Source: Neoechinorhynchus agilis
Taxonomy: Eukaryota; Animalia; Acanthocephala
Length of the DNA stretch: 64,000 nt
Direction of reading: 5' to 3'
NCBI GenBank assembly: GCA_051530055.1
Contig: CM121342.1
Coordinates: 2,390,797-2,454,796 of the forward strand
Shown: positions 22,503 to 59,255 of the stretch, piece by piece
Position numbering within the stretch: position 1 is the first letter of the stretch
Layout of the letters: the number at the start of each line of letters is the position of its first letter
Position numbers and translations under genes: made by a program
Notes under the pieces: model-generated
What the model was told of the DNA's origin: nothing
Databases searched by the model: none
What the model saw: only the letters and a program-made list of their open reading frames with translations

Positions 22503-24633
22503 TCAATCACGGCTACACTTAATACAAGACTCGTATACTGTCCCATTCGCAAGGGAATTTGAGGTCGCTGTAGTCTCATCCACAAAGTCAGAATCGTCAA
22601 CGGAACCAACTGGAAGTTGTGCCAGTGGGCTTACTCCGGTCCCGACGGTCTCCTCCGTCGTCGAAGCATCCCTAAACAGAAATAGTTGCACAAAGTCTTT
22701 ATTGTGAGTAGTACTCACTTTACATCCAGCTTTAATGAGTGTATTTGCTCAAGTTTACACGATCTTTCAACGCTATTGAACTCGTTCAAATACTCGATTA
22801 CGTCTTCAGCGGCAAGATCGTCTGAGGAATTCGAGTTTGATGGGCCGCCATTCTCTGAAGATCTTCTTAGCAGCAGAATTGGAATTATTCCATAGGTGTA
22901 AGTCAACATTAAAGGAATGCAGACGGCTAAAAGAGAAGACGAGTTCAGCTTTTGATTAGATTGGGTTTTTTCATAATGCTTCTAGCGAACATTTTAACGT
23001 GTCTGTCTGAAAAGCAAGTCTTTAAAGTCACGTAGATTTCTATGATTGTCTTCAAAATTCCGCGTAAATAAAAACTTGGGAAATTTTACAACGTTTTAAT
23101 TTGACCGTCGCTGCTTCCAGCAATTCGCTTTTTGAAACAATGGCAAAAAGTCCTAATATTTAAATGTCGATATGTTAGGAAGTTTCGAACCTCGTCGTCG
23201 GGGGGGTGTTCATCATCAGTTTGTTAGTTAGTAACAGAGGCTGATGAACTCCTTAAGAGGTTCGCAGAACGTCTTGAATAAGAAATCATTTACCGGTGTG
23301 TAAACTTTTGTAAACAACAATTCCTAGTATTTAAAAATTGATATGGTAAACTATAATTCAGGAGCGGAAGATTCAAACTCACCAACAGCAACCGCCGCGA
23401 TTGCAGGTGATGCCAGTGCAGCTCCACAGGCTGTCGCAGTCACAATACAAGATCTGAATCGGTTCTTTTTAAGTTTCTTATATACCTTTAAAGTCAAAAG
23501 ATGATTAAAAAGCTGGGCCATAAAGTGGCTCTCACCTTTCTAGCCGTGAAAAAGGGCAGTCCAACGATAATGGTCGGAATTGAGACACAAGCAAGGACAA
23601 CAAACGCGACAGGTGCTCCCAACAGAGCCATACACTGCCAAATAATCTTCTTTCTTCGGCTCCATCGTTTCCTTCCCCAGAAAGTGCAACCAGTAGGACT
23701 GAGGAAATGAAGATCACTAATGACTTTATTACAAAGCCAACAGAATTCAGTGTTGCACATTGAGCAGGTCATGTGATTGCATGAGCCATCTTCCATTTTC
23801 ATGATAGGAACCGAACAGTTAGGACATCGTTTCATCAACATAAATCCGGGTTTTATAGTCTTTTTACCATTGCTGCCGTCGTGTCTCCTCCGTTTTGATC
23901 GGTTTTCATACATTTCCTGCTGATGGCAGATCTTATTTGGATGCCAGTGCTTCTTACAGAAGTAGCAGAACGAAGTGTTACAATAGGGTCGAAGGCAATG
24001 GATGATTGGACAACTTGGCGATCCAATGACAGCGTAATGGCAGTCTGGAGCTGGACACCATCGAGTATCCTGGATACTTTGAAGCACTCGCCGAACCATA
24101 AATTGCTCATACTTATTCACAAACTCTTTACCGTCGCCATAAACACCGCCAACCAGTTCGATGTTGCTATCGTCGGAATTGGTGAGTAGAATTCGGTAAA
24201 TGTCACTTGGATGAATCTGTTGGTCGCATTCAGGAAGTGGGCATTCCATCAGAACTCGACTTTCTGAAATGGACATCTTCATCATCGTGAATAGGCATTC
24301 TTTACAGAACTTATGCCCACATGAGTGCCGAAGACATTCTACGTTAGAGCTTTTGCTCAAGCACAATCGACATGTGATGTAGTTTTTGTGTTGATTTGAC
24401 TTGGAAATCGCCGGCTTTGTTTGTTGGGGTCGCGAAAGTAGTGGTTCACCTTCATTGGTACCGGTGGTCGTCGCTGAGCTCATGTGGTGGTGATGGTGGT
24501 GGTGAAGGCGATGCCGGCGTTTGGACAAACGTTGACGCCGATTTAAACGAGGACTTGTCCGTCGCATCGACAATGGTGAATCCAAAGATCGATTACTTGA
24601 TGATCCACACACTAGCTCAAATATAGAGGACAT
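22503..24633 (-). CDS. RNF19: RBR E3 ubiquitin ligase, RNF19/Dorfin type, 4 exons
   Basis: RING1 (CRLC..CGHKFCKEC), IBR (WCPAPDC) and RING2 (KRCPNC..IMKMEDGSCNHMTCSMCNTEFCWLC), SPTGCTFWGRKRWSR, two TM helices. Exons 24633-23536, 23485-23383, 22926-22719, 22671-22503 with GT-AG introns of 50, 456 and 47 nt. Confidence 0.92.
23161..23325. ncRNA. Divergent pair of hammerhead-like motifs inside RNF19 intron 2
   Basis: Minus copy CTGATGATGAAC..GAGGTTCGAAAC (23180-23233). Plus copy CTGATGAACTCC..GAGGTTCGCAGAACGTC (from 23241). Confidence 0.55.
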
Positions 24634-25924
24634 GTGCACGTGTGAAGCTTCTCGATATCCGGTGATTGGCTTTATCGATCTAATATCACGAGATAGATAT
24701 CTACAACTTTACGGAGGTAAAAAGAAGACGAACGGCATTTGACGCTCATAATTCTTTTATTTAGGATTATTTATTGTACATTGACAAAAAACACACCGCG
24801 CTTACGAGGTTCAAAAGCAGTCGCGACTTTTTCTTTGTAAGAGATTCGCGACTTTTTTAAGCTGGTTGTCAGGCTCGTCAATGTGGCACCCTCCTATCAA
24901 GTCTGCTTAAGCTCACGAATGTGAACAAGACTGCCGAAAAAGCGGCGAAGACGAAAATAATCTTAATGTGGTAAAACACCGAGTTTAAAAAAAGAGAGAT
25001 TAGATAACAAATTTGAAAGCTTAACTGTCGATTAAATAAAAGCAGAAAATAGATCAGACTGAAAATATTCTTTAAATTTTGTTCATGTCAAACGGTTAAA
25101 ATAGGATGACTTTTATTTTTTATTTATCAAAATTTTTTAGGGTATAAATTTAAAATTGTGACTACCTCGCCTTATCAATCATTGTAAAATCTAATTGAAG
25201 TACCACCTCGATGGATTTTCTCGATATGAATAACTTCAAAAAAGCGGTTGTTAAAAGATATAAAAAAAGTTTATAAAAAGAAATTTTTTGGGAGCATAAT
25301 AACTCCAAAAAATCCGCCACTGATTTTTACAGATATGTATATTGCAAGAATGCAAAATATTGAAGAAAATAATTCTTCATATTAATAATAAAGGACGTTT
25401 CACCCGCAGTTTTCACTTACTGGTAAATAAGCGAAATTCAAAACAGCAAAAATCTTTTGATTTGTTCAGTAAAAAGCCACAAAACCCCGTCGCCACTGAC
25501 TCACAATCTCCGCTCCGTCAGCTTGCACGTCTGAAATGTAAATTAGAGCACGGTGACGAATAAACTGGAGAATGTGAGTCACATGAAATAGCGCCGAAAA
25601 GATACACGGGATAATTCATGTGAGCTTATTTTTTGCGTAGTTGGTTCTTCACACAGTTATAAAACAAAAAAATAGGCAGTTTCATTGTAAGAAGTTTATA
25701 ACAATTGGTAGACAAACGCTGTGTCGAATAACCATGCACAAATCAACTAAAAACGTTATGAATTTCGACAAGATACCTGGTGAAGTCTTAAAAAACTATT
25801 AACTCGTTCCTTTACGGTACAAATTTAGAATGTTTTATATTACCAAATAAGCGTAGACAAAATAGAAACGATTATCGTTGCGGCAAATGACTTTTTGGGC
25901 TATTAATACATTATAGTTGCCGTA

Positions 25925-28225
25925 AAAAACGATGATGAAATAATCTTCGATTTGAAAATGACAAAAAGAGCAGAATTTTGAGTGCAATCTCAAGGAAACA
26001 AGAAGCTAAAGAAATGAACACTAACGAAAAAGAGTAAAAACAAAAATGCTTTTGAATTATCACTTTCTTAGTCGAACTTTAAATAATGAGATGAAAGGAA
26101 TATTGTTTTCAACATTTACGTTGTAGTAAGCAGTTACGAAGATGAAATAATCTTCGATTTCAAAATGGAAAAAGAGTAAAAATTTTGACGAAAAAGAGTA
26201 AAAACAAAAATGATTTTGCATTATTCACTTTCTTAGTCGAAATTTAAATAATGAGATGAAAGGAATTTTGTTTTCAACATTTACGTTGTAGTTGGCATTT
26301 ACGAAGATAAAATAATCTTCGAATTAAAAATGACAGAAAAGAGCACAATTTTGATCAGAATCTCAAGGAAACAAGAAGCTAAAGAAAAACCTGAAAACTA
26401 AAGAGGAAGAGCAACAAAGATGATGTTTTTGAATAATTTTTTTGGTTGAGCTTTAAATAATGAGATGAAAGGAATTTTGTTTTCAACATTTACGTTGTAG
26501 TAAGCAGTTACGATGATGAAATAATCTTCGATTTAAAAATGTCAGAAAAGAGCAGAATTTTTATCAGAATCTCAAGGAAACAAGAAGCTAAAGAAAAACC
26601 TGAAAACTAAAGAGGAAGAGCAACAAGGAAGATGTTTTTGAATAATTGTTTTGGTTGAGCTTTAAATAATGAGATGAAAGGAATTTTGTTTTCAACATTT
26701 ACGTTGTAATAAGCAGTTTCGAAGATGAAATAATTTTCGATTTAAAAATGACAGAGAAGAGCAGAATTTTGATCAGAATCTCAAGGAAAAAAGAAGCTAG
26801 AAAATTGAATACTAACGAAAAAGAGTAAAAACAAAAATGCTTTTGCATTATTCACTTTCTTAGTCGAAATTTAAATAATGAGATGAAAGGAATTTTGTTT
26901 TCAACATTTACGTTCTAGTTAGCAGTTACGAAGATGAAATAATCTTCGATTTCAAAATGGAAAAAGAGTAAAAATAAAAATGCTTTTGAATTATCACTTT
27001 CTTAGTCGAACTTTAAATAATGAGATGAAAGGAGTTTTGTTTTCAACATTTACGTTGTAGTAAGCAGTTACGAAGATGAAATAATTTTCGATTTCAAAAT
27101 GACAGAAAAGAGCAGAATTTTGATCAGAATCTCAAGGAAACAAGAAGCTAAAAAAAGAAACTAAGAAAGAGAAAAATGTTTGATATTTTTTGTGACTTTA
27201 AAAATGAGATGAAAGGAGTTTTGTTTTCAACATTTACGTTGTAGTAAGCAGTTCGAAGATGAAATAATTTGATTTAAAATGACAGAAAAGAGCAGAATTT
27301 TGATCGTTGGGGTAAAATGAATACTAACGAAAAAGAGTAAAAACAAAAATGCTTTTGCATTATTCACTTTCTTAGTCGAACTTTAAACAATGAGATGAAA
27401 GGAGTTTTGTTTTCAACATTTACGTTGTAGTCATTCGAAGATGAAATAATTTTCGATTAAATGACAGAAAGAGCAAATTTTGATCAGAATCTCAAGAAAC
27501 AAGAAGCTAAAAAAATGAAAACTAAAGAAAGAGCACAAAGAATGTTTTTGAATATTTTTTGGTTGAGCTTTAAAAATGAGATGAAAGGAGTTTTGTTTTC
27601 AACATTTACGTTGTAGTAAGCAGTTTCGAAGATGAAATAATTTTCGAATTAAAAATGACAGAAAAGAGCACAATTTTGATCAGAATCTCAAGGAAACAAG
27701 AAGCTAAAGGAAAACCTGAAAACTAAAGATGAAGAACAACAAAGATGTTTTTGAATAATTGTTTTGGTTGAGCTTTAAATAATGAGATGAAAGGAGTTTT
27801 GTTTTCAACATTTACGTTGTAGTAAGCAGTTTCGAAGATGAAATAATTTTCGATTTAAAAATGACAGAAAAGAGCAGAATTTTGATCAGAATCTCAAGGA
27901 AACAAGAAGCTAAAAAAATGAATACTAACGAAAAAGAGTAAAAACAAAAATGCTTTTGCATTATTCACTTTCTTAGTCGAAATTTAAATAATGAGATGAA
28001 AGGAGTTTTGTTTTCAACATTTACGTTGTAGTTGGCATTTACGAAGATAAAATAATCTTCGAATTAAAAATGACAGAAAAGAGCACAATTTTGATCAGAA
28101 TCTCAAGGAAAAAGAAGCTAAAGAAAAACCTGCAAACTCAAGAGGAAGAGTAAAAACAAAGATGCTTTTGAATTTCCTACTTTCTTGGTTGAAATTTTAC
28201 ACAAGGAATGAAAGGAGCATTTTTG
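25925..28225. repeat. Tandem satellite, ~11 units, full unit ~207-211 bp
   Basis: The anchor aacatttacgtt recurs 11 times with spacings of ~140-211 bp. Two alternative distal modules; strong A-rich strand bias. Confidence 0.95.
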
Positions 28226-34582: not shown

Positions 34583-35947
34583 CTACTTGCGTCGTCTTTT
34601 AGGAACTACATTGTCCGTTGATGAAGTCCATCTCGACTCTCCTCTGCGTGAATAAGGATTATTTCTTGACGACGTCTGATGTCGTCCGCCGCCGCCTCCA
34701 TTTCTGCCATTGACTACTGAGACGTGTGAAGTAGGCCTGGAGGACGATTGATTGGTGCCATTAAGAATTGATCTCCCATTCCGCTTCTCAGAAACCTTTT
34801 GTCCATCCTGTTCAGTAATCTCAGTCACCTCACCGTTGTCAAAGATCTTTGTCGTAGTCACCCGATGACCGTTCACAATTCTAGTTGTCTTCTGAACTCC
34901 TTGTCTCATCTCAGGACCCCCCTTCCCTCCACTCATGTAAGAACTAATGCTCGTAGCGAAACCTCCATTCGTCTGAGCTCTTTGAGGTTCAGCTGCGTCG
35001 AACAACAAACTATTGAACATTCCAAAGCCAGGCATCGAACCCAATGGGTTCATTAGAATATTGATTGGGTTGAGTTGTTGACGACCGAAGTTGAAAAACC
35101 CACGTGGACTGGGATCCATAAAATCATCGAAGTTAAAGAGTCCGCCGCCATTACCACCGGATCGTTGCCCAAGTTCTCCGAACATTTCTTCAAACAGCTG
35201 AAACGGGTTTCGAGACATGAACTCATCGAATATGTCGAAAATGTCCGCATGTCTACGAGCTGAAAACCTATTAGTAGTGTGGTCAGATGAACCCGTGCCG
35301 CCGTTAGAGCTCGCCCGAAGTCCATCTAAACCATACTGATCGTAAATTCGTCTTTTTGAAGGATCTGACAAAACTTCGTATGCAGCAGTAATCTGCTTAA
35401 ATTTAACTTCCGCTATGTGTTTATTGTCCGGATTCTTGTCTGGATGCCAGCGTAAAACGATGAAGATGATGTCGCGCAAAATTTAGAGAAAATAGTAGAG
35501 TTCTTTAAAATAAAACAAAAATAAAATCATGTATTTTCGAACAGACTTTTCTTGGTTTTTATGTTTGAGACTAACACGAAAAAAAACACAAAGCACGTTG
35601 AAAATAAGATTTCAATCAAATTTTACATTTTCATCTTTTTTTCAGTAGTACAAACGAAGAGAAAATAATATATTTTCGGATTTTGATCAATCGGTTAAAA
35701 TAACGGAAAAATCATTATTTGTTAACGAGAAGCAAATCGCCAAGGAGGATTTCAAGAGAGAGAAAAAATGTTATAATTAAGTCTATAATTTGGTTTGTTT
35801 ATGAAAGAAGAAATGACTCATCTTCATCGATAGAGCCAATTTTCTGTACGCTTTCTTGATATCATCACCATTTGCAGACCTCGTGATTTCAAGAATCTTA
35901 TAAAAATCGGTTTCCTCCACGTTGTTTGGATGGGGTGACGACGGCAT
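34583..35947 (-). CDS. DnaJ class B co-chaperone (DNAJB6/B2-like)
   Basis: The J-domain FYKILEI...[11 protein letters not shown] (35947-35831) continues as [11 protein letters not shown]...[15 protein letters not shown] (35452-34583). A G/F-rich region and a TTRIVNG..VTT C-terminal domain follow. Confidence 0.9.
35453..35830 (-). other. 378-bp interruption of the J-domain bounded by 12-bp inverted repeats (non-canonical intron or MITE insertion)
   Basis: CGATGAAGATGA at 35458-35469 and TCATCTTCATCG at 35818-35829, with TA on both flanks. It contains in-frame stops, and no usable GT-AG solution was found. Confidence 0.75.
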
Positions 35948-35955
35948 CGACGACT

Positions 35956-38900
35956 CTAATCTGAAACGAAAAAGCGTAGCTGTGAAGCAACAAAAAAGGC
36001 ACAAATCGTTCGTTGGTACAACAACAACTCGTGATTGGCTGAATGTTAAAAAGAACAGAGCGCCAATAATATCGACTAAAGAGGCGATTACGAAGACGGG
36101 CATCCAATTATATTGCCGGGAAGTTACGAGATGTGCCGAAAGTGGTCCAACTAAAATACCCGGAACGGTAGCGATCGTGTTTGATATTGCGAATGTAACT
36201 GCAGAGCTGCTCGGTGCCACGTCAACGTGGTTTATAAGGTGTCCGGCACTGTTGAACGCTAAAAGTCCCATCGAAGTTGTGACGAGGCTGAAACGTGAGG
36301 TTTTAAGCGTTAGCAATGGAGGAAACGCTTACGTTATAGCGTACAAAACGCTCGTCTTCACAAAAGCGAACGCCAAAATCAATAGACCAGGAATAAAAAG
36401 ACCCAATATCGTCATTAATCGCCGAGTTGATATAATCGATAGTCGGTAACGTCGAACGAGCACATCCGCGAGATGACCGGCACCTTAAAGCAAATGCGCG
36501 AGAGAGCGGAGAAACGAGATCTTTAAGAAATGAGGATTTCTTCCGTGTCGTCGGCTCGACGTCAAATGGTTTCCGAATTAAAACATACTGATTCGCTTCA
36601 ACATTTCCCAAATTACGAGAAAACTAGAAAAAACCTCGACTCGCTCGTGCTCTGAAGCTTAAAATATATACGGTTTCCATGACAACCTTGTACGATTTAA
36701 TAAAAGGACTTCATTTACGCCTTGAGCAAATATTAAGGAATCAAATTTAAATCTTCCACAACTACAAGTTCTCAGGCAATCCCGGATACTCGAGCCATAC
36801 AAAACGCTCAAAAACCTTTTTAGGCGAAAAATCTAAGTAAAATTTGTGTTTTATCGGCGAAAAAAAGGAAAGTGATGACATTGTAAAGGAGGAATCGCTA
36901 TCTTAAATGGCTAAAATTTTATTTTCTAAAATAATGACTGACCAGTGAATCGTAGAATGATTTATGGATAAATTTTGATTTACTCATCATGGTTTCGACA
37001 TTTCATTTTTTTATCACAGAAAATCCTTCGAGAGAATTGGAGGTGTGGTTATTGAGATGTTTCAAAAAAATAAAGGTAACAAACTTCGAGAATGGCGATC
37101 CCGAGTACCCGAGCCACAGAAAACAACCAAATACCCTTTTTTGTTGGACAAAAAATCTAAGTAAAATAAATTTTGAAAGCACCGAAATTATTTTTATTCG
37201 AGGGCCACTAACAATTTTTTAAAAAAAATACAACATACGAGAAAATCGATCTTCAGCATCCTGTGTTCGATGATTTCATGTTTGTAAAAATTTGTCGAAA
37301 TGTATAAATTAAGTTTTTTGCTTGCCGTTTTTTATAGTAAGAGATGCAATCTATTTTATTGAAAAAAAATCCAAATTGTATATTTTTTAGTGAGATTTAC
37401 ATTGTTCTCAGAATTTGAAACATTTTCAACGTTTTCTACACTATACAGGCCACTAAGATTTAGCGAAGAAAGATAAACTCATGAGAAGGTGAGGTGCTTA
37501 CATTGATTTCGGGCGAATGGAAACGACACGATAAAAATCCGATTTTCCGTGAACGCTCAAGAGAAACCCCGAGGCTTGTTAGCGATAAACGGCACTGTTA
37601 CGTCTTGGACTTAATATTTTTTGTGGAAAAGTGAACCCCAGTGCTTTAAATATGATATAGAGATACAGGTAATTCGAGTAGCACTCCTATCGCACATTAG
37701 AAAGCTCGATAAAGACTGAGAATATTGCCGTTTCGTTTTCCGGCAATAGATCCTTACAGAGCGAAAAATATCATGAGAGTAAGGCATCATTGTCGCATTT
37801 GTTAAAGAAGTAGTGCGATTAACGCGAAGCTGCATATTTACAGGAAAACGATGACTCCCGAACGCTTTGTTGGAAGCTAAAGTCATCGAAATCGTTCAAA
37901 TTTGAGTATAAGTCGCAAAATCGGGGAAAATCTTAATCGGATTCGACAAGACCGTTGTCCTCTACACAGAAAAGAGAAAATTCCAACTACTGAGAAAAGA
38001 GTCGATATACGCATATTGAAATGGCCAACACGATGGAACAGAAAACAATGGAAAAGTTTCCCTCCAATCACTTCTTTAGTTGACCTAAACACAGTCAGGG
38101 AGGCTGGGTTGACGATCCCAGGTCCCGAGTCAAAACGGAAACAATCATGGGTGTGTTGTGATGAATCCCTCTGTTATTTTAGATTCAATTGATAAAATAA
38201 CCGATTCAATCAGGAGAAATATCGTCTTTAATGCGATCTCCCTCGGATGTCGACGAGCGACCTAAACAATAACAAAGAAAAGATCCTTTGAATCATGGAG
38301 CAATTCGCGCCTAAAGCGTTTACCACAACGCGGTCCATCAAAAAAGAGAGAGAGAAATCAATAAACTATATTGATATTTGAAAAGTGTTATTTAATTAAG
38401 TCTTCACCCGGCCCGACAAGGTTCGAAAAGTCTTTAATAAAAAACTATTTACCGGGTGAAGACATTTGTAAACAATAATTCTCTAATCAATAAACTATAT
38501 TATTGATGGACAAAATAGCAATCTTCAATACAATATTTTGATCAATTGTAATTTAAGAAATTAATTACTGGTACACAGTTAATTAAATACGAAATCTAAA
38601 ATTTACAGCTGAAAAATCAAGATTGAACGAGGATCCATAGGTGATTTATCAAAAAAATACGTGTGATTAGTAATAAAAAAATCAGTGGTTTGTGAGCATA
38701 ATTCTCCGATTCAAGATTCATTTATTATTATGAAATATTTCGAAAAATTAAACCTCGCCTCATCAGTCATTGCTTGTAAGTTTTCATCCACGACAATCGA
38801 ATATTTACCATAACCGAAAAATCTTTTTGATATAATCCAAAAAGTTTGCTGTGAAATTCTTGAGCCGTTTGATCAACCAGAAAAAATCTTTAAAAAACAC

Positions 38901-47136: not shown

Positions 47137-47422
47137 GTTTGCTATATTTGAAGCAAGATTTAATATTATGGTTGCAAAATGGTTTTTATATGTCGGAAAA
47201 TTTAAAGGAATTTATTGATTCCGATATGTCGGCGCAATATTGTGCTTTTGTCAAGGTTTTCAAAGAGTTTTAGTCGCTGACATTCAAGTGCGAATAAAAC
47301 ATTTTAACAACCTTGATAAAGGCACAATATAATGCTGAAATATTGGAATCAATAAATCCTTTTAGTTTTGCACCGGCATACAAAAAACATTAATGGTTGT
47401 AAAATTGTTAAAGTATAGCAAA
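47137..47422. mobile_element. Degenerate fold-back/MITE-like element
   Basis: Long imperfect inverted arms, e.g. aaaggaatttattgattcc/ggaatcaataaatccttt and gtttgctata/tatagcaaac. Confidence 0.6.
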
Positions 47423-48198: not shown

Positions 48199-48831
48199 AT
48201 GAACGACACTTACTTCAAATCCTTCATGAATATGGACAACCGCAAAAGATCCCTAACGGTTAAGTCACTTATTCCACCAATGAAAAAGCTGCGGTTAAAC
48301 GACGATGATACAGAGCCTCCCGAAAGTGAAAAACAAAGAATAATAAACGAAGCAGGTGGACCAAAATCTCATCCAAGCGACACAAATGCATCGCCTTTAC
48401 TCGTATTGCTGCTCAGACAACGATTTTGGAAAAGCGTATCGTCAAAATCAAAACCGACATACAAAGCACCACAGAAAACTTATTCTGAGATATCGTCAAT
48501 GTCGATAGAGTCCTTAAAAAATTATGTCGAGCACATAAGTGAAATGGATCGTTATAACCGGATAATTAAAAAACCTCATCCCATGGAACTATTGTCGTAT
48601 ATTTATCGAGTGGCACTGTACGTAGCCATTAAAAAGACAAGAGAGGTGTATATGCATGAATTACTCGCGTTCAAAGCAGTTCTACCATCGGCGAGGGGTA
48701 AAGGTCTCGCTGAATGGGTGCCCACCACGAGAAGTTTCTTGAAGAGAAAATGCGTTCCCGATCCTTTAATAGATAGAATCATGTTAAAGGTTTATGAATA
48801 TAGAGATGTCTATATTCAGGATCACGTTTAA
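48199..48831 (+). CDS. Intronless orphan protein, paralogue of 53109..53702
   Basis: 210-aa ATG ORF. A gapless 52-aa C-terminal block has 23 identities with the 53109 protein. NES-like motif VKSLIPPMKKLRL. Confidence 0.8.
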   Translation: MNDTYFKSFMNMDNRKRSLTVKSLIPPMKKLRLNDDDTEPPESEKQRIINEAGGPKSHPSDTNASPLLVLLLRQRFWKSVSSKSKPTYKAPQKTYSEISSMSIESLKNYVEHISEMDRYNRIIKKPHPMELLSYIYRVALYVAIKKTREVYMHELLAFKAVLPSARGKGLAEWVPTTRSFLKRKCVPDPLIDRIMLKVYEYRDVYIQDHV

Positions 48832-49013
48832 CGACAGCGCAAATGTCTTATAATATGTTTTTGTAAGAATGAGTGTAGAATCATTTATGTTACCGATTTT
48901 TTTATAAGTAAAAAATATATATTGATTAGTTTATGTGCTTGATCTCGATATTGCATGTGGGCAAAGCGCTATCAAAATATTGCACCACCCTAATTCCAAA
49001 TTTAACTGATTAA

Positions 49014-49093
49014 AGATGGACTTTTTTCCAAAATATTTTATTCGATCATTGATGTGTCCAATCGAATAAAATATTTTGGAAAAAAGTCTATCT
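49014..49093. repeat. 33-bp stem, 14-nt loop hairpin
   Basis: 49014-49046 pairs with 49061-49093 with a single G-T wobble. Confidence 0.85.
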
Positions 49094-49100
49094 TATACAA

Positions 49101-49478: not shown

Positions 49479-50732
49479 TTATCTTGGTCCTCCTGTTCTT
49501 CGATTAACGCCTTTCATATAGGCACAATAACTCATATAAGTTTCCTTCCATGTAGTACCACCGATAATCTTCTCGGCATCAAAATCAAGTTTGCATTTTC
49601 GTCTCCAAGCATGTTCTATAGAGCTTTTCACCGTTGGATTTAATCTCTCAAAGGTTGAAATTTCCTTTTCATCGCAGAAATCAACCATATAATCCACAAC
49701 TCTCATAATAGGGAACTGCGAGTTGAATCTGTACGTGCCAACATCATTGGTGAACTTCTCAAATTGCTCTCTTTCATAAGCTACGACTGGATTACTCTCG
49801 GGTTCCGGCTGGACCTCATTTCCGTATTTCCGAAGCGAATGTGCGACAATGAATGCTTCTTCTTCTTCACGTTTCTTTTTCTCCTCTTCCTCCTTCAGTC
49901 TCTCTTCGTATTTTCGAATGTAAACCTTATCTCCGAACGCTAGGTCCTTCTTTTCTCTAAGCAAATCGATCAATTTGAATGGTTGGATATTATCCATCGA
50001 TATCTTTTCTAATTTCCTATGTATCATATCCACATATTCTGGGGGGAATCGTCGTTTAGCAGGTTGTGTAATACATCGAGGAGGGTCCATATCTGCATAA
50101 AGATCTTTGGACGAACGTGAACGGTGGTACTTTTTGTACCGTCGATACTTCCCAGTTTCTCGAAGATAGTCCATAAAATCCCGAGCGGATATCCTTCGTA
50201 TAGGACTCTTTCTTTTTCCACGTCTCCAAGGGTTGCCACAAACTGTTTGTGCCACACCGCCTGTAGTGCCTGTAGGATCTATTTTAGCGAACGTATACCC
50301 AGGCTTCAAAAAGAAGGGTGTTTCATCATAATCTGAGAAAATGTATGTTTCATACTGTTCTTTAAGCCATTCCAAACCATACATATTTATAACTCTATCA
50401 TATATCTTAAAATTCTCACCTATAAGATTGAGGTAATACACCATTTTTTTCTTATTCTTTGTGATCGAATTTTTGTGAAGATTTCGAATAATATCTCGCA
50501 TTTCATAATGGTTGTAATTTTTTCTAGTTTTTCCACCATGAAGCCATTGTCGCCTGGTTTCCTCTTGCTTATTGTAACTAAATTGTTGTCGACGTTCATC
50601 ATGCTCACGTTTTTCTCTTTCAAGCTTTGCTTTTATAGCTTCTTCACCTAGTTTCATTCTTTTCGCCGTTTCCTTTTCCACGAGGAGATCAAAGTAGTTC
50701 TTCACTTTGTTCTTATAATCTTTTACGTCCAT
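49479..50732 (-). CDS. Intronless protein with a C-terminal Elongin-A-like domain
   Basis: 417-aa ORF. CDEKEISTFERLNP..AWRRKCKLDF..TWKETY aligns without gaps to Elongin A CTPDQLYRIEEYN..LWKVHCHRDF..SWREMY. Confidence 0.78.
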   Translation of the reverse strand: MDVKDYKNKVKNYFDLLVEKETAKRMKLGEEAIKAKLEREKREHDERRQQFSYNKQEETRRQWLHGGKTRKNYNHYEMRDIIRNLHKNSITKNKKKMVYYLNLIGENFKIYDRVINMYGLEWLKEQYETYIFSDYDETPFFLKPGYTFAKIDPTGTTGGVAQTVCGNPWRRGKRKSPIRRISARDFMDYLRETGKYRRYKKYHRSRSSKDLYADMDPPRCITQPAKRRFPPEYVDMIHRKLEKISMDNIQPFKLIDLLREKKDLAFGDKVYIRKYEERLKEEEEKKKREEEEAFIVAHSLRKYGNEVQPEPESNPVVAYEREQFEKFTNDVGTYRFNSQFPIMRVVDYMVDFCDEKEISTFERLNPTVKSSIEHAWRRKCKLDFDAEKIIGGTTWKETYMSYCAYMKGVNRRTGGPR

Positions 50733-51053
50733 CTTTAATGATTAGTATTGAAAGAAATACAGTAAGTCGTCCACAGATTGTGTTTGTACAAGTTCTCAAT
50801 ACTATCAGTATTAGTCAAAGTAAGTGCAGAAAGTGAACGCGTAGAACGATCACACAAAGAGCTCGTATACATACTACGGTTAGAATCGTGAACGCTGATT
50901 GGTTGGACGCAAATTTTCCATCATTATCTATGACATTATTAAGCACCTCTAATGCCAATACTGCGGGTCATTAAAAAATCGTTTGATCTTTATTTTTTAC
51001 ATATGCGGGAGACTAATTGCATCTTTGATCGGCCGCGAAATTGTGCAACTTTC

Positions 51054-52466
51054 CTAGCTCGCTATAGCATCATATATTACGTTCGTTATCGATAAAATCG
51101 ATTCCACAATTTTAGTTGCTCTAAAAATTCTTTGGAAACAGCTGAGAATGTTGCTTTTTGCTCTTGAAAAAAATGTTTGTTGAAGCGGAGCGAATTTACG
51201 AGGTTGAACTTTTCGATCTTCTGTGGTACAAAACCCTTTCGTGTAGGGCCTAACTTTAACTTTGCGTTCATACCTCGGAGACTGTAAGTCATAAATTTCG
51301 ATCCCTTCTCCTTTTTTGAGACGTCGTCTAACCATATTTTCATTTGGTTCCTTTTCACGTGTAAAATCCCGCTTTTTGGCCGGGACCTTTACATTATTTC
51401 TTTCCTTTCTCCTACTTAAATAAGCCAAATATTCGTTGACCTTTTCTCGAATCAACAGACGAGCACATCGATCGCTTATACCTTCTACGGGAATTACGCT
51501 AACCACATTGACCGCCTCCACTTGAGGTTTTGCATTGACAATTTTTCGATTTTGTCTTAATTTAGCGATAACGTCGAAGAATCTTTTTCTGAGAGCGTAT
51601 CTCGGTCCAATTGTCATATGATTTAAATGATCAATAAGACTGCTAATGCTACTTTGTGAAGCTCTTTTTGGTATAACTTCAAGTCTCCTAAATTGATTGA
51701 CTAGAGAGCGAACTTCACTTCTTGCGCTGTCTCCATTTTCAAACGTAAGTAAATCGAATTGATTTGCGAGCTTATTAACTGATCTCGAAAAATTTGAACT
51801 TGTTTTATTGTATCCGTTATCCATGCCTTTACAATTAACTTTATCGCCCCTCAAAACATTCTTTTGTGTAGGAGAAAAACCGCCAGATATTTTTCTTATA
51901 TGTTCTGATTGATTTTTTATTGCACTTTTGAGCTGCGCTGACTTTTGTTGATTTTTTTGCAATTTACTGGAAAGCACATTTGGGTCATTTCTAAGCGATT
52001 GCCTTTGATCTAAGCGTAGACTTCTAAATTGATCACAGAACTGCTCAAATTGATTTTTATATGCATCCACATGATTTATGAAGCACGGTTCAGTGGTTTG
52101 TCCGACTATTTTTATTGGCGATATTGTTAATTTTCCCAATTTTTCATCAATTTCTTCAATCGGATTTTTTTGTGCATGTGTATGATTAGATGGATTAATT
52201 GAAAGGCGATTAAGTCTATCAATAAGTTTTCCAATTTTACTAGTTGCATTGAGCGCGAGTCCTTGGAATGAATCTATTAAACGATCAATTTTTCCCATGT
52301 TTTTGTAATCATTAAATAATTGGTTGAATCGAAGAGCAAAACCATCAATTTGGCTTAGATTCTTAAGATCGGCCATTTCAGTGAATAAATCGAGATGGGA
52401 AAAATATCGGGGTTTCTGTACAAAGTGATCTCCAAAATTATTGTAGTGTGAAAAATCAGCAAACAA
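51054..52466 (-). CDS. Intronless orphan protein with seven NES-like helical repeats
   Basis: 470-codon ORF (first ATG at MADLKN); repeated hydrophobic pattern h-xx-h-xxx-h-xx-h-x-h; basic C-terminal third. Confidence 0.8.
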   Translation of the reverse strand: MFADFSHYNNFGDHFVQKPRYFSHLDLFTEMADLKNLSQIDGFALRFNQLFNDYKNMGKIDRLIDSFQGLALNATSKIGKLIDRLNRLSINPSNHTHAQKNPIEEIDEKLGKLTISPIKIVGQTTEPCFINHVDAYKNQFEQFCDQFRSLRLDQRQSLRNDPNVLSSKLQKNQQKSAQLKSAIKNQSEHIRKISGGFSPTQKNVLRGDKVNCKGMDNGYNKTSSNFSRSVNKLANQFDLLTFENGDSARSEVRSLVNQFRRLEVIPKRASQSSISSLIDHLNHMTIGPRYALRKRFFDVIAKLRQNRKIVNAKPQVEAVNVVSVIPVEGISDRCARLLIREKVNEYLAYLSRRKERNNVKVPAKKRDFTREKEPNENMVRRRLKKGEGIEIYDLQSPRYERKVKVRPYTKGFCTTEDRKVQPRKFAPLQQTFFSRAKSNILSCFQRIFRATKIVESILSITNVIYDAIAS

Positions 52467-53108: not shown

Positions 53109-53702
53109 ATGTATAATGACTCAAACAAAAATCAAGAAGGCGAATTATCAGAGCATTCCCCTAAAACTGCACATGAGAATTTAACTATTTCTCACTTATT
53201 CAGTGATCTTCAACTCCAGGAACAATCCTCTTCTGATACTACAACGAAGGCAGTTGATTTAAATCCAGAAATCCCGCTGGATTATAGTGATGACGACGAA
53301 AAGAGCGATCCATTTCCTTTCAAAAACAGCGATCAATCATTAATGTCACCGATTTCACTTCGTTTTCGAAAATCACAGTCCCCAAATTCTCAACCAGAGA
53401 AAGATTCTCAATTATCTACCTCAACAATCGCTGCTTGTGCCACGGCAAGAGTACGGTTAGCTCCGATTGCTCTTTATCGAGCGATTTTCACCATAAGACG
53501 AATGTATGCAAGCGAACTTCGAAATGTGAACGCAACTGTTCCTTTCGCTTTGGGAAAGTCTTATAATGAATGGAAAAGAACTACACAGCGATACTTTAAT
53601 CGCCGATGCGTTCCAGAACGTCTCGCTGCAACTTTGCTGGCACGCATTGATCGTCTGTATGAAAATTATTTTGTGGAACATTCACAAAATTTAGTTAATT
53701 GA
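53109..53702 (+). CDS. Intronless orphan protein, paralogue of 48199..48831
   Basis: 197-aa ATG ORF; acidic Ser/Pro-rich N-terminus, ISHLFSDLQL motif and the shared C-terminal domain. Confidence 0.8.
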   Translation: MYNDSNKNQEGELSEHSPKTAHENLTISHLFSDLQLQEQSSSDTTTKAVDLNPEIPLDYSDDDEKSDPFPFKNSDQSLMSPISLRFRKSQSPNSQPEKDSQLSTSTIAACATARVRLAPIALYRAIFTIRRMYASELRNVNATVPFALGKSYNEWKRTTQRYFNRRCVPERLAATLLARIDRLYENYFVEHSQNLVN

Positions 53703-54423: not shown

Positions 54424-54822
54424 ATGTTCTCAGCCTTCGAGCGTCTCGCTTTTCTGGTAATACTGGTATTCAACCCCGTCAACAACCTTCTCTGTTACGA
54501 ATGCTTTTCCACTCGACCGTCGGATTGCAAAGTAATTGAAGATTTTTTTATCGTTGAGTGCCTTAATAACATTACTCAATACTGCTGGACCGGGGTAATA
54601 GGCGAGTTAACTTATCGGACTTGCGCCAGTGGTCTATGTCAGGGACGTGTTCCTCTTCACGATAATTTTTTGGAACTCATATTTGATGGAATACCCACCC
54701 GATACATTATGGAGAATCGCTGCTGTGCAACAGACCTTTGCAACGGTGTTGTGTCGCTCCAAACAATTGGAGCTTTAATAATTCCATTCATTGCCATTAT
54801 TATTGGTAACCGACATTTTTGA
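54424..54822 (+). CDS. Ly6/uPAR three-finger protein, probably GPI-anchored
   Basis: Signal peptide, CYEC...CCxxDLCN with 10 Cys, hydrophobic C-terminal tail. Confidence 0.9.
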   Translation: MFSAFERLAFLVILVFNPVNNLLCYECFSTRPSDCKVIEDFFIVECLNNITQYCWTGVIGELTYRTCASGLCQGRVPLHDNFLELIFDGIPTRYIMENRCCATDLCNGVVSLQTIGALIIPFIAIIIGNRHF

Positions 54823-55231: not shown

Positions 55232-55572
55232 TGCAATCACCAACGTCCGCAAAATTGGAGCTTCTCTCCTTCCTCGGCTGTCGCTATCGCGCTTGCAGCA
55301 TTGCCTCGTTGTACTGCGAGCGAGACACCTTCTCGTGCGTAGGCGGTCTCTCAATTTATTCGAGAGATCCTTGAGCAGAGAGAGTGCCGAGCTGCCAAGC
55401 GCTCCATTCGTCTCTACTCCGAATGGGGCAAAATAGTGACCCCTTGCTAAATCCCTATATTTTCGTACCTTCCTCCCTTCCGCTGCACTGGCTGCAACTA
55501 CAGGGATTTCGAGAGGGAATGTTGTTTACTGCGAGGGTATCCGCATTTGCCCTCCCGCCAAGGAAAGACCGA
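55232..55572 (-). mobile_element. CRE 3' fragment with small internal deletions
   Basis: Reverse complement closely matches 58880-59255. Confidence 0.85.
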
Positions 55573-56672: not shown

Positions 56673-57080
56673 TTAGTTTAAAAATAGTAAAAAACCCACA
56701 ATCAAAAGCAGTGTGAATAACAGAATTCCAACAGAGCGAGAGTTTACTCCGGCTCCATTACACAGATCGGTTTTACAGCAGTAGTTTTCCATAATATATC
56801 GACTTGGGATTCCATCGTAAATACGGGTGAAAGTCGCATCGTGCAGTGGTACACGTCCTTGGCACAATCCGGACGCACAACCACGGTAAAGTATTGTCCC
56901 AATGACTCCCTTCCAGCAATGTTGAGTTATGTTTGGTAAACATTCAACCTCGTCGAAATCTGCCGTATTTTTACAATTCGTGTTAGGTTCAGTGTAACAT
57001 TCATAACATGTCAAAGTGTTCGTGGAAGCCAAAAACACCACTATTAGAAGAAGAGTAATGAGTTGGATTTGTTGAAGCAT
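56673..57080 (-). CDS. Ly6/uPAR three-finger protein, paralogue of 54424..54822
   Basis: Same 10-Cys pattern; 57 of 85 residues identical across the LU domain. Confidence 0.9.
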   Translation of the reverse strand: MLQQIQLITLLLIVVFLASTNTLTCYECYTEPNTNCKNTADFDEVECLPNITQHCWKGVIGTILYRGCASGLCQGRVPLHDATFTRIYDGIPSRYIMENYCCKTDLCNGAGVNSRSVGILLFTLLLIVGFLLFLN

Positions 57081-58034: not shown

Positions 58035-59255
58035 GACTATGGACCGCGAGTGCGATAGGGTGAGCGCTCTCTCGGCCCACGAAGCGTTATTTCTGATAAA
58101 GAACGCACTCTTTATCCAGAAATTGTTATATAAGGTCCGCACAACAACATTCTTCAAACATAAGGAAGGATTGGCTAAGCTCGACGGCAAGGTGAGGGCA
58201 TGCCTCGAGCGTATTTTAAATGTCCAACTCTCAGATGAGGCGTGGCGACAAGCTTCTTTGCCTATGTCATCTGGGGGATTGGGCATTCGGGCGCGAGTAG
58301 ACCTTGCCTTGCCAGTCTTTCTTGGATCGTATGAACGGATTCAATTGATAGCGAAATCATTCTGAGGGGAAAGTTTTGTCTTGACCAAGACTTTGTGGTG
58401 GCAGTTGAAGAATGGCGCCAGCAGACAGCCGTTAACCATGTTCCCGTGAATGGCCTCAGACAGTCGATCAGGGACAGACCTCTCGTCGCGAGAGCTCACA
58501 GCTCTCTACTTTCAGGTTCTCGCGATGGGTAATCCGAGCTAGATTGTTGTCAGTTTCGACACGAAAATCAGGGGCGTGGTTGGAGGCTGTTCCTCTGGCA
58601 TCTGTGGGAACTCTTCTCAATGATGAGGTAACGATGATCGCAGTGTCCTTAAGGCTTGGTCTGCCGATATGCACGCCCCATCGCTGTCGATGTGGGTCTT
58701 TGGTTGATGCTTTCGGGCGACACGGTCTCGTCTGCAGAAGGTCAGGAGGAACGTTCTCACGCCATTCTGAAATCAATAACGCAATTTCTCCGGCGTTGAG
58801 AACGGCGAACTTCCCCAACATCTTGGAACCCGCCCATCTTTGTCGACTAGACGGTCGTCGACCTGACGGAATTTCGCTCTTTCCGTGGTGAGGGCAAATG
58901 CCTTCTCTAGGACGTCACGTGTGTGGACACCCTCGCAGTGAGCAACATTCGGTACTTTCTCAAAATCGCTGGAGTTGCAGCTAGTGCAGCGGAACGGAGG
59001 AAGGTACGAAAATATAGAGAATTAGCAAGGGCCCAACATCTTGTCCCCTTCGGAGTAGAGACGTATGGAGCGCTTGGCAGCTCGGAACTCACTCTGCTGC
59101 AGGATATCTCGAAGAAATTGAGAGGAACGACCGGCGACGCACGAGCAGGTGTATCCCTGCGACAAAATATCTCACTTTCAGTACAACGAGGCAATGCTGC
59201 TAGCGACATCCGAGGAAAGAGAGAAGCTCCAATTTTGCGGACGGTGGTGATTGTA
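58035..59255 (+). mobile_element. CRE-clade non-LTR retrotransposon, 3' half
   Basis: LSAHEALFLIK, WRQASLP...GGLGIR, SGAWLEAVP, CRCG...HGLVC Zn finger, RH..IN and RPDG...DVT restriction-like endonuclease, PFGVETYG, SLSVQRGNA. Confidence 0.92.

What the first reader, a model, noticed from the sequence alone, without database searches (positions are those of the whole stretch)
51054..52466. Protein with seven tandem five-position NES consensus motifs
IDRLIDSFQGLAL, IGKLIDRLNRLSI, IEEIDEKLGKLTI, FEQFCDQFRSLRL, VNKLANQFDLLTF, VRSLVNQFRRLEV and ISSLIDHLNHMTI all fit h0-xx-h1-xxx-h2-xx-h3-x-h4. They are separated by polar linkers, with only the hydrophobic positions conserved. One NES suffices for export, so an array suggests multivalent CRM1 binding (a sponge or scaffold). 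A MIT-interacting (MIM1-like) helix is an alternative reading.
Basis: partly seen in the sequence, partly recalled or inferred. Interest (0 to 1): 0.7.

Follow-up and report, generated by a model that had tools for sequence, protein, structure and literature searches.

The report
Orphan protein with seven NES-like repeats
An animal gene with no detectable relatives encodes a basic protein with seven diverged copies of a short helix-then-break module that matches the nuclear export signal consensus; whether any copy binds the export receptor CRM1 is untested.

Summary
The minus-strand ORF 51054-52466 (probable ATG at 52376, 440 aa) has exactly seven matches to Φ0xxΦ1xxxΦ2xxΦ3xΦ4, at aa 30, 48, 73, 110, 200, 222 and 244. 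Shuffles give 0.68 on average, and 0 of 20,000 reach seven.

The seven are diverged copies of one module. Non-hydrophobic positions are conserved too: D/N/E at +5 in 7/7, and Pro two residues after Φ4 in 4/7.

The gene looks real: coding-like codon usage in this frame only, a chance ORF probability of about 1e-12, and AATAAA downstream. It is an orphan, with no Pfam or PDB match and no homologue among 1.84 billion representative proteins.

I re-implemented NESmapper from its published code. All seven score above its threshold (core 3.0-10.5; the template scores 8). A 2026 Xpo1 preference map flags disfavoured flank residues in five of the seven. LD, LRR and NR-box patterns match 0/7; strict MIM1 matches 0/7 and its core 1/7.

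Two AlphaFold2 runs gave pLDDT 36-37, so they do not settle folded versus disordered.

Best reading (confidence about 0.4): a shuttling cargo or adaptor with redundant export signals. A CRM1 sponge is possible but unsupported (about 0.1). A self-packing helical repeat is nearly as likely (about 0.35).

The parts
51054..52376 (-). Intronless CDS of the 440-aa orphan protein (ATG at 52376, stop TAG at 51056-51054). The ORF stays open upstream to 52466.
   Evidence: ORF list and sequence. The public gene model matches exactly. Codon-usage log-odds are positive only in this frame, and the chance of a 470-codon open frame is about 1.4e-12.
52311..52349 (-). Degenerate repeat 0, aa 10-22, IDGFALRFNQLFN (Φ4 lost).
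   Evidence: Ninth-best PSSM window. NESmapper core -5.
52251..52289 (-). Repeat 1, aa 30-42, IDRLIDSFQGLAL.
   Evidence: Regex match. NESmapper class-1a core 7.0.
52197..52235 (-). Repeat 2, aa 48-60, IGKLIDRLNRLSI, followed by N-P.
   Evidence: Regex match. NESmapper core 4.5. The only repeat with the MIM1 core LxxRLxxL.
52122..52160 (-). Repeat 3, aa 73-85, IEEIDEKLGKLTI, followed by S-P.
   Evidence: Regex match. NESmapper core 10.5, the best of the seven. Its spacers beat 98% of random spacers.
52011..52049 (-). Repeat 4, aa 110-122, FEQFCDQFRSLRL.
   Evidence: Regex match. NESmapper core 8.5. Asp at Φ4+1 is disfavoured according to the 2026 Xpo1 preference map.
51741..51779 (-). Repeat 5, aa 200-212, VNKLANQFDLLTF, followed by E-N-G.
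   Evidence: Regex match. NESmapper core 6.0.
51675..51713 (-). Repeat 6, aa 222-234, VRSLVNQFRRLEV, followed by I-P.
   Evidence: Regex match. NESmapper core 4.5.
51609..51647 (-). Repeat 7, aa 244-256, ISSLIDHLNHMTI, followed by G-P.
   Evidence: Regex match. NESmapper core 3.0. Best match to the repeat profile.
51363..51413 (-). Bipartite-NLS-like basic cluster, aa 322-338, RRKERNNVKVPAKKRDF, inside the basic segment aa 257-395 (pI 10.5).
   Evidence: Regex (K/R)(K/R)x10-12(K/R)3of5. There are 4 distinct starts against 1.1 expected in shuffles (p about 0.05).
51057..51191 (-). C-terminal amphipathic helix, aa 396-440.
   Evidence: Modelled as one long helix, at low confidence. High hydrophobic moment at aa 409-410.
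50989..50994 (-). AATAAA polyadenylation-signal-like hexamer, starting 60 nt after the last base of the stop codon.
   Evidence: Sequence and regex.

Best explanation
This is a real, lineage-restricted, intronless animal gene. It encodes a basic (pI about 10) protein that probably has little stable fold.

Anatomy. The N-terminal 256 aa carry seven old, diverged copies (plus one or two decayed ones) of a 15-17-residue module. Each module is a short amphipathic helix, Φ0-x-x-Φ1-Φ-[D/N]-x-Φ2-x-x-Φ3, followed by x-Φ4 and a helix breaker (N, S or G, often then Pro). Polar linkers of 5-77 aa separate the copies. A basic segment with NLS-like clusters and a terminal amphipathic helix follow.

Most likely mechanism. 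Each module is a ligand for a hydrophobic groove, and the known receptor that fits best is exportin CRM1/XPO1. The protein would enter the nucleus through its basic half and be captured by CRM1-RanGTP through any one, or a few non-adjacent, of its redundant PKI-class signals. It would then be exported, either as a mainly cytoplasmic shuttling cargo or as an adaptor carrying whatever the basic half binds. Multiple copies would raise capture probability and tolerance to mutation. They would not hold seven receptors at once.

Shown: the repeat, its conservation pattern, its predicted NES competence, coding potential and orphan status. Inferred: accessibility of the motifs, CRM1 binding, shuttling, and any adaptor role.
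For: - Seven matches against 0.68 expected; 0 of 20,000 shuffles reach seven.
- All seven pass the re-implemented NESmapper. Class-1a cores are 7.0, 4.5, 10.5, 8.5, 6.0, 4.5 and 3.0, against a threshold of 2 and a template score of 8.
- 8 windows score at least 3, against 0.85 in shuffles (0 of 3000). The three conserved control proteins of the window give 0; four other ORFs (three neighbouring orphans and one uncharacterised ORF) give 1 each.
- On tested peptide sets NESmapper reached sensitivity 0.88-0.96 and specificity 0.90 at threshold 2.
- Residues at the Φ positions fit the published pocket preferences: I/V/F at Φ0, Leu at Φ1 in 5/7, Phe at Φ2 in 4/7, Leu at Φ3 in 6/7.
- No Pro lies within any motif, and no Gly lies in the Φ1-Φ2 or Φ3-Φ4 spacers.
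- Φ4 lies at 120 degrees on the helical wheel, while Φ0-Φ3 lie at 280-360 degrees. It is followed by N/S/G and then P, which gives the helix-to-loop ending that separates true NESs from false positives.
- Linkers are 73% polar and only 22% hydrophobic.
- Among helical-motif consensuses tested, only the NES patterns cover all seven copies.
- The hydrophobic pattern is kept although synonymous sites have diverged: identical residues share a codon in only 16 of 54 cases, and unit nucleotide identity is 0.47 against a background of 0.29.
- Bipartite-NLS-like clusters lie in the basic half.
Against: - There is no binding, localisation or expression data, and no homologues with which to test constraint.
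- The 5-Φ consensus is only 9% precise even inside known cargo proteins.
- NESmapper still calls about 1.5 false sites per LMB-insensitive yeast protein.
- Consensus-perfect peptides with five leucines can be inactive.
- The 2026 Xpo1 map disfavours basic residues at PKI positions 1-4 (present in repeats 1, 2, 5 and 6) and acidic or hydrophobic residues at Φ4+1 (repeats 4, 5 and 6).
- Spacers beat random spacers in only 3 of 7 repeats.
- The most conserved non-Φ residue (D/N at +5) is not a known CRM1 determinant, which hints at another constraint.
- Φ0/Φ1/Φ2/Φ3 spacing is also simply two heptads of an a/d stripe.
- The charge-hydropathy plot is borderline.
- AlphaFold2 is uninformative, so burial of the motifs in a fold is not excluded.
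- My ELM-style NES regex, written from memory, matched none of the seven.
Confidence: 0.4

Rival explanations
1. A helical repeat that has nothing to do with CRM1. The short amphipathic helices pack on each other (helix-loop-helix bundles, especially the 22-residue-period trio at aa 200-256), or they oligomerise, or they bind a different groove-bearing partner, possibly a product of the neighbouring orphan genes. The NES match would then be a by-product of a two-heptad hydrophobic stripe plus a hydrophobic residue after the helix cap.
For: - Φ0/Φ1/Φ2/Φ3 at 0, 3, 7 and 10 is the a/d heptad pattern, and position +4 is also mostly hydrophobic.
- The conserved D/N at +5 and Q at +6 are not explained by known CRM1 preferences.
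- Both AlphaFold2 runs model repeats 1 and 2 as one continuous helix, aa 30-58, at low confidence.
- Most consensus matches are not NESs.
- The gene sits in a cluster of lineage-specific orphan genes that could be partners.
Against: - Repeat spacing is irregular (18, 25, 37, 90, 22 and 22 aa), and linkers are polar and of low hydrophobicity.
- Each helix has only about 11-13 residues, bounded by Pro or Gly.
- No confident packing appears in either AlphaFold2 run (pTM 0.20-0.21).
- Φ4 at +12 does not fit the heptad pattern.
- No known helical-repeat or motif family matches.
Confidence: 0.35
2. One reading: a multivalent CRM1 sponge or scaffold. Several CRM1-RanGTP complexes would bind one chain at once, either titrating export capacity or docking the protein by avidity at CRM1-rich sites such as the cytoplasmic face of the nuclear pore.
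For: - Seven predicted-active 5-Φ motifs lie on one chain.
- Precedents for CRM1 used through avidity or docking exist. The Mto1 NES-mimic docks a multimeric complex at nuclear pores (PMC6008054). A viral RNA-bound oligomer of an export adaptor engages a CRM1 dimer (PMC4360530).
- Very high-affinity NES peptides block export in trans (10.64898/2026.07.31.742000, abstract).
Against: - Trans-inhibition in that study needed picomolar single sites that are not released, not many ordinary sites. Scores here are ordinary, at about template level or below.
- By my estimate from the size of the roughly 120-kDa receptor, linkers of 5, 9, 9 and 12 aa between neighbours are too short for adjacent occupancy. 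At most three or four receptors could bind at once.
- There is no evidence of high expression.
- No natural tandem-NES sponge turned up in my literature searches.
Confidence: 0.1
3. The ORF is not a functional protein-coding gene. It could be a young de novo ORF, a decaying gene or an annotation artefact, with the repeat a relic of internal duplication.
For: - There is no homologue anywhere.
- The exact protein occurs on only one contig in the collection, so no assembled transcript supports it.
- GC3 is 0.27, below the 0.37-0.47 of conserved genes in the window.
- No TATA-like element lies within 324 nt upstream.
Against: - A 470-codon open frame has a chance probability of about 1e-12 at the window's stop-codon frequency.
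- Codon usage is coding-like only in this frame, at the level of the conserved control genes.
- AATAAA lies 60 nt after the stop codon.
- The repeats have diverged at synonymous sites while keeping the hydrophobic pattern and D/N at +5, which implies purifying selection on the protein.
Confidence: 0.08
4. The repeats are MIM1-like helices that bind MIT domains (the ESCRT-III / VPS4 type of interaction).
For: Repeat 2 contains LxxRLxxL. Repeats 2 and 3 fit a relaxed Φxx[RK]ΦxxΦ core.
Against: - The strict MIM1 consensus (D/E)xxLxxRLxxL(K/R), written from memory, matches 0 of 7; the core matches 1 of 7.
- MIM1 helices sit at the C-terminal end of ESCRT-III proteins. This protein has no Snf7/ESCRT-III Pfam match, and the array is in its N-terminal half.
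Confidence: 0.02

Closest known systems
PKI-type (class 1a) leucine-rich nuclear export signal with Φ0 (the 5-Φ 'superNES' pattern of Güttler et al. 2010)
   Same: The spacing Φ0xxΦ1xxxΦ2xxΦ3xΦ4 is identical in all seven copies. The pocket-specific residues fit (I/V at Φ0, L at Φ1, F/L at Φ2, L at Φ3). There is no internal Pro, and the helix is followed by a break. All seven score above the NESmapper threshold.
   Different: Known NESs occur singly or as a few unrelated copies, not as seven homologous tandem modules. Five of the seven carry flank residues reported as disfavoured. D/N at +5 is conserved without a known CRM1 reason. Binding is untested.
Paxillin-family LD motifs (arrays of short amphipathic helices in a disordered N-terminal half, binding four-helix-bundle partners such as the FAT domain); from my own knowledge
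   Same: The architecture is shared: several copies of a helical motif roughly 8-13 residues long with a conserved acidic residue, separated by polar linkers of variable length and followed by a different C-terminal half.
   Different: The LD consensus LDxLLxxL and a relaxed version both match 0 of 7. The acidic residue sits one position later. There are no LIM domains and no sequence homology.
Mto1 NES-mimic docking on CRM1 at nuclear pores (S. pombe; PMC6008054)
   Same: It is a precedent for an NES-like helix used for avidity-based docking through multiple copies rather than for export.
   Different: In Mto1 the multiple copies come from a multimeric complex with one motif per chain, not from a tandem array. 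The two proteins are not related in sequence.
Engineered non-NES and high-affinity NES peptides (Rymarenko, Huyton and Görlich 2026 preprint)
   Same: They show that 5-Φ peptides range from export-dead to export-blocking depending on spacers. That is the range within which these seven motifs must fall.
   Different: Those are designed single peptides. The numeric scoring matrix is held only as an image, so I could apply only the rules stated in the text.

Membership tests
CRM1-dependent class 1a (PKI-type) NES | Hydrophobic spacing Φ0-xx-Φ1-xxx-Φ2-xx-Φ3-x-Φ4 | tested here: met
   7 of 7 repeats. 0 of 20,000 shuffles reach seven matches.
CRM1-dependent class 1a (PKI-type) NES | Spacer and flank residues compatible with export activity (activity-based profile score) | tested here: met
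   Re-implemented NESmapper gives class-1a cores of 3.0-10.5, all at or above the threshold of 2. Shuffle control.
CRM1-dependent class 1a (PKI-type) NES | Agreement with the Xpo1 positional preference map (no basic residues at positions 1-4; no acidic or hydrophobic residue at Φ4+1; no Pro; no Gly in the Φ1-Φ2 or Φ3-Φ4 spacers) | tested here: inconclusive
   The Pro and Gly rules are met in 7/7. Basic residues at positions 1-4 occur in repeats 1, 2, 5 and 6. D, E or I at Φ4+1 occurs in repeats 4, 5 and 6. The numeric matrix was not available.
CRM1-dependent class 1a (PKI-type) NES | Accessibility: a disordered or surface-exposed site with a helix-to-loop ending | tested here: inconclusive
   Polar linkers and Pro two residues after Φ4 in 4/7 favour accessibility. 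The charge-hydropathy plot is borderline. AlphaFold2 pLDDT of 36-37.5 is uninformative.
CRM1-dependent class 1a (PKI-type) NES | RanGTP-dependent binding in the CRM1 NES groove and leptomycin-B-sensitive export | not testable with these tools
   Needs a reporter assay, a pull-down or a co-fold model with CRM1. Structure prediction accepts only sequences from this window.
MIM1 (MIT-interacting motif 1) | Consensus (D/E)xxLxxRLxxL(K/R) at the C-terminal end of an ESCRT-III protein (consensus from memory) | tested here: not met
   0/7 strict and 1/7 for the core LxxRLxxL. No ESCRT-III/Snf7 Pfam match. The array is in the N-terminal half.
LD motif (paxillin family) | Consensus LDxLLxxL (from memory) | tested here: not met
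   0/7 for both the strict and the relaxed pattern.
Leucine-rich repeat | LxxLxLxxN core with a regular period of 20-29 residues | tested here: not met
   0 matches. Periods are 18, 25, 37, 90, 22 and 22 aa. No LRR Pfam hit.
Coiled coil | Uninterrupted heptad register over at least 3-4 heptads | tested here: inconclusive
   Each repeat spans only two heptads and ends in N/S/G then P. I counted by hand that the register shifts by one residue between neighbouring repeats. No dedicated coiled-coil predictor was run.
Classical bipartite NLS | (K/R)(K/R)-x10-12-(K/R)3 of 5 | tested here: met
   aa 322-338 plus overlapping matches; 4 starts against 1.1 in shuffles, p about 0.05. This is a pattern match only; import was not tested.

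The most novel reading that the evidence does not exclude
This is a natural tandem-NES protein. All or most of the seven homologous modules bind CRM1-RanGTP. The array works through multivalency, either docking on CRM1 clustered at nuclear pores or other CRM1-rich sites, or loading several exportins onto a large cargo bound by the basic C-terminal half. That would make it the first known export-signal array produced by internal duplication.
Probability: 0.12. Interest if true: 0.75.

Novelty: new variant of a known kind. Interest (0 to 1): 0.4.

Why it matters
Nuclear export signals are normally treated as single, weak, degenerate motifs. If this array is functional, it would be a natural experiment in seven related spacer contexts around one Φ skeleton. 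It would test two questions directly: does multivalency, rather than single-site affinity, tune CRM1 engagement, and can one chain carry several exportins? It would also be a compact benchmark for NES predictors, because each peptide can be synthesised and tested in a standard GFP reporter. If the helices simply pack together, the case shows how a two-heptad amphipathic helix plus a capping hydrophobic residue imitates the strictest NES consensus.

Tried and rejected
Homology searches:
- The word-indexed search of 5.8 billion proteins and the exhaustive phmmer search of 1.84 billion representatives returned only the query itself.
- The neighbouring orphan orf417 is equally alone.
- tblastn-confirmed scans of viral and metagenome contigs found nothing.
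- Pfam gave only a sub-threshold DUF2935 hit, and PDB sequence search nothing below E = 0.48.

Structure:
- AlphaFold2 on the full length and on aa 1-266 gave pLDDT 36.1 and 37.5. I therefore did not run fold searches, which would be meaningless on such models.

Source organism:
- It stayed unidentified. Rfam and tRNA scans of the window were empty.
- A Pfam sweep of 45 ORFs gave only general animal domains.
- A paper search for the assembly accession found nothing.
- The RNF19-like ORF hits insects and nematodes at only about 50% identity. This may reflect a diverged intronless copy rather than an isolated lineage.

Repeat and motif tests:
- Tandem Repeats Finder and self-BLASTP do not see the repeat; it is too diverged.
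- No flanking direct or inverted repeats suggest a mobile element around the gene.
- LD motif, MIM1, NR box, CoRNR, LRR, IQ, BH3 and WH2 patterns were tested and rejected. A MAPK D-motif pattern touches none of the repeats. My from-memory ELM NES regex matched none, because it demands flanking acidic residues.
- The numeric Xpo1 scoring matrix of the 2026 preprint is held only as images.
Full report
**What is there**

Window 51054-52466 (minus strand) is the longest open frame in the 64-kb window. The listed ORF starts at a TTG. The first ATG is at 52376, giving 440 aa, and this is exactly the public gene model on a 16.4-Mb chromosome record of assembly GCA_051530055.1.

The surroundings are animal, not prokaryotic:
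- gene density is low and GC is 31-42% outside a few repeats;
- there are non-LTR reverse-transcriptase fragments, two Ly6/uPAR/CD59-like genes, and EF-hand, DnaJ, MFS, RNase HII and RBR-E3 exons;
- the RBR E3 ORF finds mostly insects and nematodes, at about 50% identity.

I could not name the organism.

**Is it a gene?**

- At the window's stop-codon frequency (0.056 per codon), a 470-codon open frame has probability about 1.4e-12.
- A codon log-odds score trained on five recognisable coding exons or genes of the window (three conserved, two Ly6-like) is positive only in the annotated frame (+0.036, against -0.12 to -0.35 in the other five frames). That matches the controls (+0.02 to +0.09).
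- An AATAAA lies at 50994-50989, 60 nt after the stop codon.
- GC3 is low (0.27), and no transcript-derived copy of the exact protein exists in the protein collection.

Expression is therefore unproven, but coding potential is good.

**The observation**

- Shuffles of the protein give 0.68 matches on average, and 0 of 20,000 reach seven.
- Other open frames of the window carry 3.6 matches per 1000 aa.

The seven copies are versions of one module rather than independent coincidences:
- position +5 is D/N/E in 7/7 (p = 6e-6);
- Q is at +6 in 3/7;
- S/T/A is at +11 in 5/7;
- the residue after Φ4 is N, N, S, D, E, I or G;
- Pro follows at +14 in 4/7 (p = 6e-5).

So the statement that only the hydrophobic positions are conserved is incorrect.

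The copies are old. The 39-nt units are 47% identical, against 29% for random in-frame pieces. Identical residues use the same codon in only 16 of 54 cases. Neither Tandem Repeats Finder nor self-BLASTP detects them. Keeping the pattern through that much divergence implies selection on the protein; this is an inference.

Two decayed copies lie at aa 10 and aa 297.

**Architecture**

- aa 1-256: the array, with linkers of 5, 12, 24, 77, 9 and 9 aa. The linkers are 73% polar and 22% hydrophobic.
- aa 257-395: a basic segment (pI 10.5) with overlapping bipartite-NLS-like matches around aa 322-338 (4 starts against 1.1 expected, p about 0.05).
- aa 396-440: an amphipathic helix.

**Relatives**

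There are none.
- Pfam gives only a sub-threshold hit, and PDB sequence search nothing below E = 0.48.
- The word-indexed search of 5.8 billion proteins and the exhaustive phmmer search of 1.84 billion representatives return only the query.
- Viral and metagenome contig scans are empty.
- The downstream gene on the same strand (orf417) is equally orphan.
- Two paralogous orphans, orf210 and orf197, bracket the pair.

**Testing the NES reading**

*1. Activity-based scoring.* The NESmapper paper's supplement holds the program and its trained profiles. These were derived from export assays of point mutants of PKI-based templates in NIH3T3 cells. I re-implemented it.
- All seven motifs are called class 1a, with core scores 7.0, 4.5, 10.5, 8.5, 6.0, 4.5 and 3.0. 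The template scores 8 and the default threshold is 2.
- They stay above threshold both with the flank factors as published and with the charge term corrected. The published script starts its charge variable at -100, so that factor is always 1.8.
- Windows with core at least 3 number 8 in the protein, against 0.85 in shuffles (0 of 3000).
- The three conserved proteins of the window score none. Three neighbouring orphans and one uncharacterised ORF score one each.
- On tested peptide sets the method had specificity 0.90 at this threshold. In full-length LMB-insensitive yeast proteins it still makes roughly 1.5 calls per protein.

The result therefore predicts that the isolated peptides would export a reporter. 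It does not show that they do so in the native protein.

*2. Spacers.* Keeping each motif's Φ residues and randomising the spacers, the real spacers beat random ones in repeats 3, 4 and 5 (p = 0.02, 0.07, 0.05). They are average in the other four.

*3. The 2026 Görlich-laboratory preprint.* It maps Xpo1 preferences at all 15 PKI positions.
- Fitting its rules: hydrophobic Φ0 (I/V favoured), Leu at Φ1, Phe at Φ2, no Pro anywhere from Φ1 to Φ4+1, no Gly in the Φ1-Φ2 or Φ3-Φ4 spacers, Arg/Lys at position 11 in three repeats, and Cys at position 6 in repeat 4.
- Against its rules: basic residues at positions 1-4 in repeats 1, 2, 5 and 6 (E4R impaired export); Asp, Glu or Ile at Φ4+1 in repeats 4, 5 and 6 (N15E impaired export); and Leu in the Φ2-Φ3 spacer of repeat 5.
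- The same paper shows that peptides with five leucines at the Φ positions can be export-dead.
- The numeric matrix is stored only as an image, so no product score could be computed.

*4. Structural logic.* On a helical wheel, positions 0, 3, 4, 7, 10 and 11 fall within 280-40 degrees, but Φ4 (+12) lies at 120 degrees. A conserved hydrophobic residue there makes sense only if the helix ends before it. That is the helix-then-extended conformation of bound PKI-type NESs, and the helix-to-loop ending is a feature that separates real NESs from false positives in NESdb. It is also what a hydrophobic residue after a helix cap looks like in a folded protein.

*5. Base rate.* The 5-Φ consensus had 9% precision inside known cargo proteins.

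**Testing the alternatives**

- Consensus patterns for LD motifs, NR box, CoRNR, LRR, IQ, BH3 and WH2 match none of the repeats. A MAPK D-motif pattern touches none of them.
- Strict MIM1 matches none. Its LxxRLxxL core matches only repeat 2, and a relaxed core matches repeats 2 and 3. These patterns are from memory.
- The MIM1 alternative is therefore not supported.
- AlphaFold2 without an alignment gave mean pLDDT 36.1 (full length) and 37.5 (aa 1-266), with pTM 0.20-0.21. The models put helices over the repeats but give no confident packing.
- The charge-hydropathy position of aa 1-256 is just on the disordered side. It is no clearer than for an EF-hand protein of the same window.

**Interpretation**

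Shown: a coding-like orphan gene, and seven conserved helix-plus-break modules that meet both the strictest NES spacing and an activity-based NES score.

Inferred: the modules are accessible, bind CRM1 and make the protein a shuttling cargo or adaptor.

I put this at about 0.4. If the array is accessible, at least one of seven predicted-active signals should work. Accessibility itself is roughly an even bet.

- The precedents use avidity through oligomers or picomolar single sites.
- Linkers of 5-12 aa between neighbouring motifs look too short for two roughly 120-kDa exportins to sit side by side. This is my estimate, not a computation.

A CRM1-independent helical repeat, either self-packing or binding another partner, is nearly as likely as the best reading (0.35). 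It is favoured by the conserved D/N at +5 and Q at +6, which no CRM1 rule explains.

A non-functional ORF gets 0.08 and MIM1 gets 0.02.

**Novelty and interest**

My literature searches found no natural protein with a tandem array of homologous NES-consensus modules. This rests on limited searches. I class the finding as a new variant of a known kind, namely arrays of short helical motifs, or NES-like signals.

Interest is moderate at 0.4. The pattern is real, statistically strong and cheap to test. But it sits in an unidentified species, has no relatives and no expression data, and has a mundane explanation that is nearly as likely.

Noticed in passing
window 48199-48831 (+) and 53109-53702 (+): Two intronless orphan ORFs (210 and 197 aa) are paralogues: 35% identity over their C-terminal 72 aa, E about 1e-12. 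They bracket the two minus-strand orphans (orf417 and the 440-aa protein), forming a small cluster of lineage-specific genes. Neither has a Pfam domain.
   Followed up: partly
window 49479-50732 (-): The 417-aa Lys/Glu-rich ORF lies 321 bp downstream of the target on the same strand. It also has no homologue in the 5.8-billion-protein search and no Pfam match. It could be co-expressed with the target or be a functional partner.
   Followed up: partly
window 54424-54822 (+) and 56673-57080 (-): Two Ly6/uPAR/CD59-like three-finger paralogues, 53-56% identical. Each has an N-terminal signal-like segment and a C-terminal hydrophobic tail (GPI-anchor-like).
   Followed up: partly
window 26024-28217: A satellite-like tandem array with a period of about 206-209 bp and 84-94% matches. 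It explains the GC dip to 0.28 and the strong GC/AT skew of that 2-kb bin.
   Followed up: no
window 49013-49094 and 47198-47369: A near-perfect palindrome (34-nt arms, 97% complementary, 14-nt loop) lies between the convergent 3' ends of orf210 and orf417. An 80-nt-arm hairpin (79%) lies 1 kb upstream of orf210. Either could be a MITE-like element or a terminator-like element.
   Followed up: no
window 55234-55514 and 58958-59253: Inverted repeats of 46-167 nt, 83-87% complementary and 3.4-3.9 kb apart, enclose the second Ly6 gene. They are probably two copies of a transposable element in opposite orientation.
   Followed up: no
window 12181-14243: A GC-rich (0.50) block of overlapping ORFs with reverse-transcriptase (RVT_1) matches. 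This is a degraded non-LTR retrotransposon.
   Followed up: no
window 23494-24639 (-): An RNF19-like RBR (IBR) E3 ligase with C-terminal transmembrane segments is encoded as one uninterrupted 381-aa ORF. Its best hits (insects, nematodes, an acanthocephalan) reach only about 50% identity. Either the lineage is isolated or this is a diverged intronless retrocopy.
   Followed up: partly
window 35380-35960 (-): The J-domain of a DnaJ-like gene seems split between two ORFs (..AYRKLAL / RWHPDKN..). I could not find canonical GT-AG boundaries at the expected junction by eye, so the gene model here deserves checking.
   Followed up: no
not in the window: NESmapper.pl (supplement of PMC4168985): The published script initialises $charge to -100. 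The C-terminal-flank charge factor is therefore always 1.8, whatever the sequence. Scores from the released program are inflated relative to the method described in the paper.
   Followed up: yes
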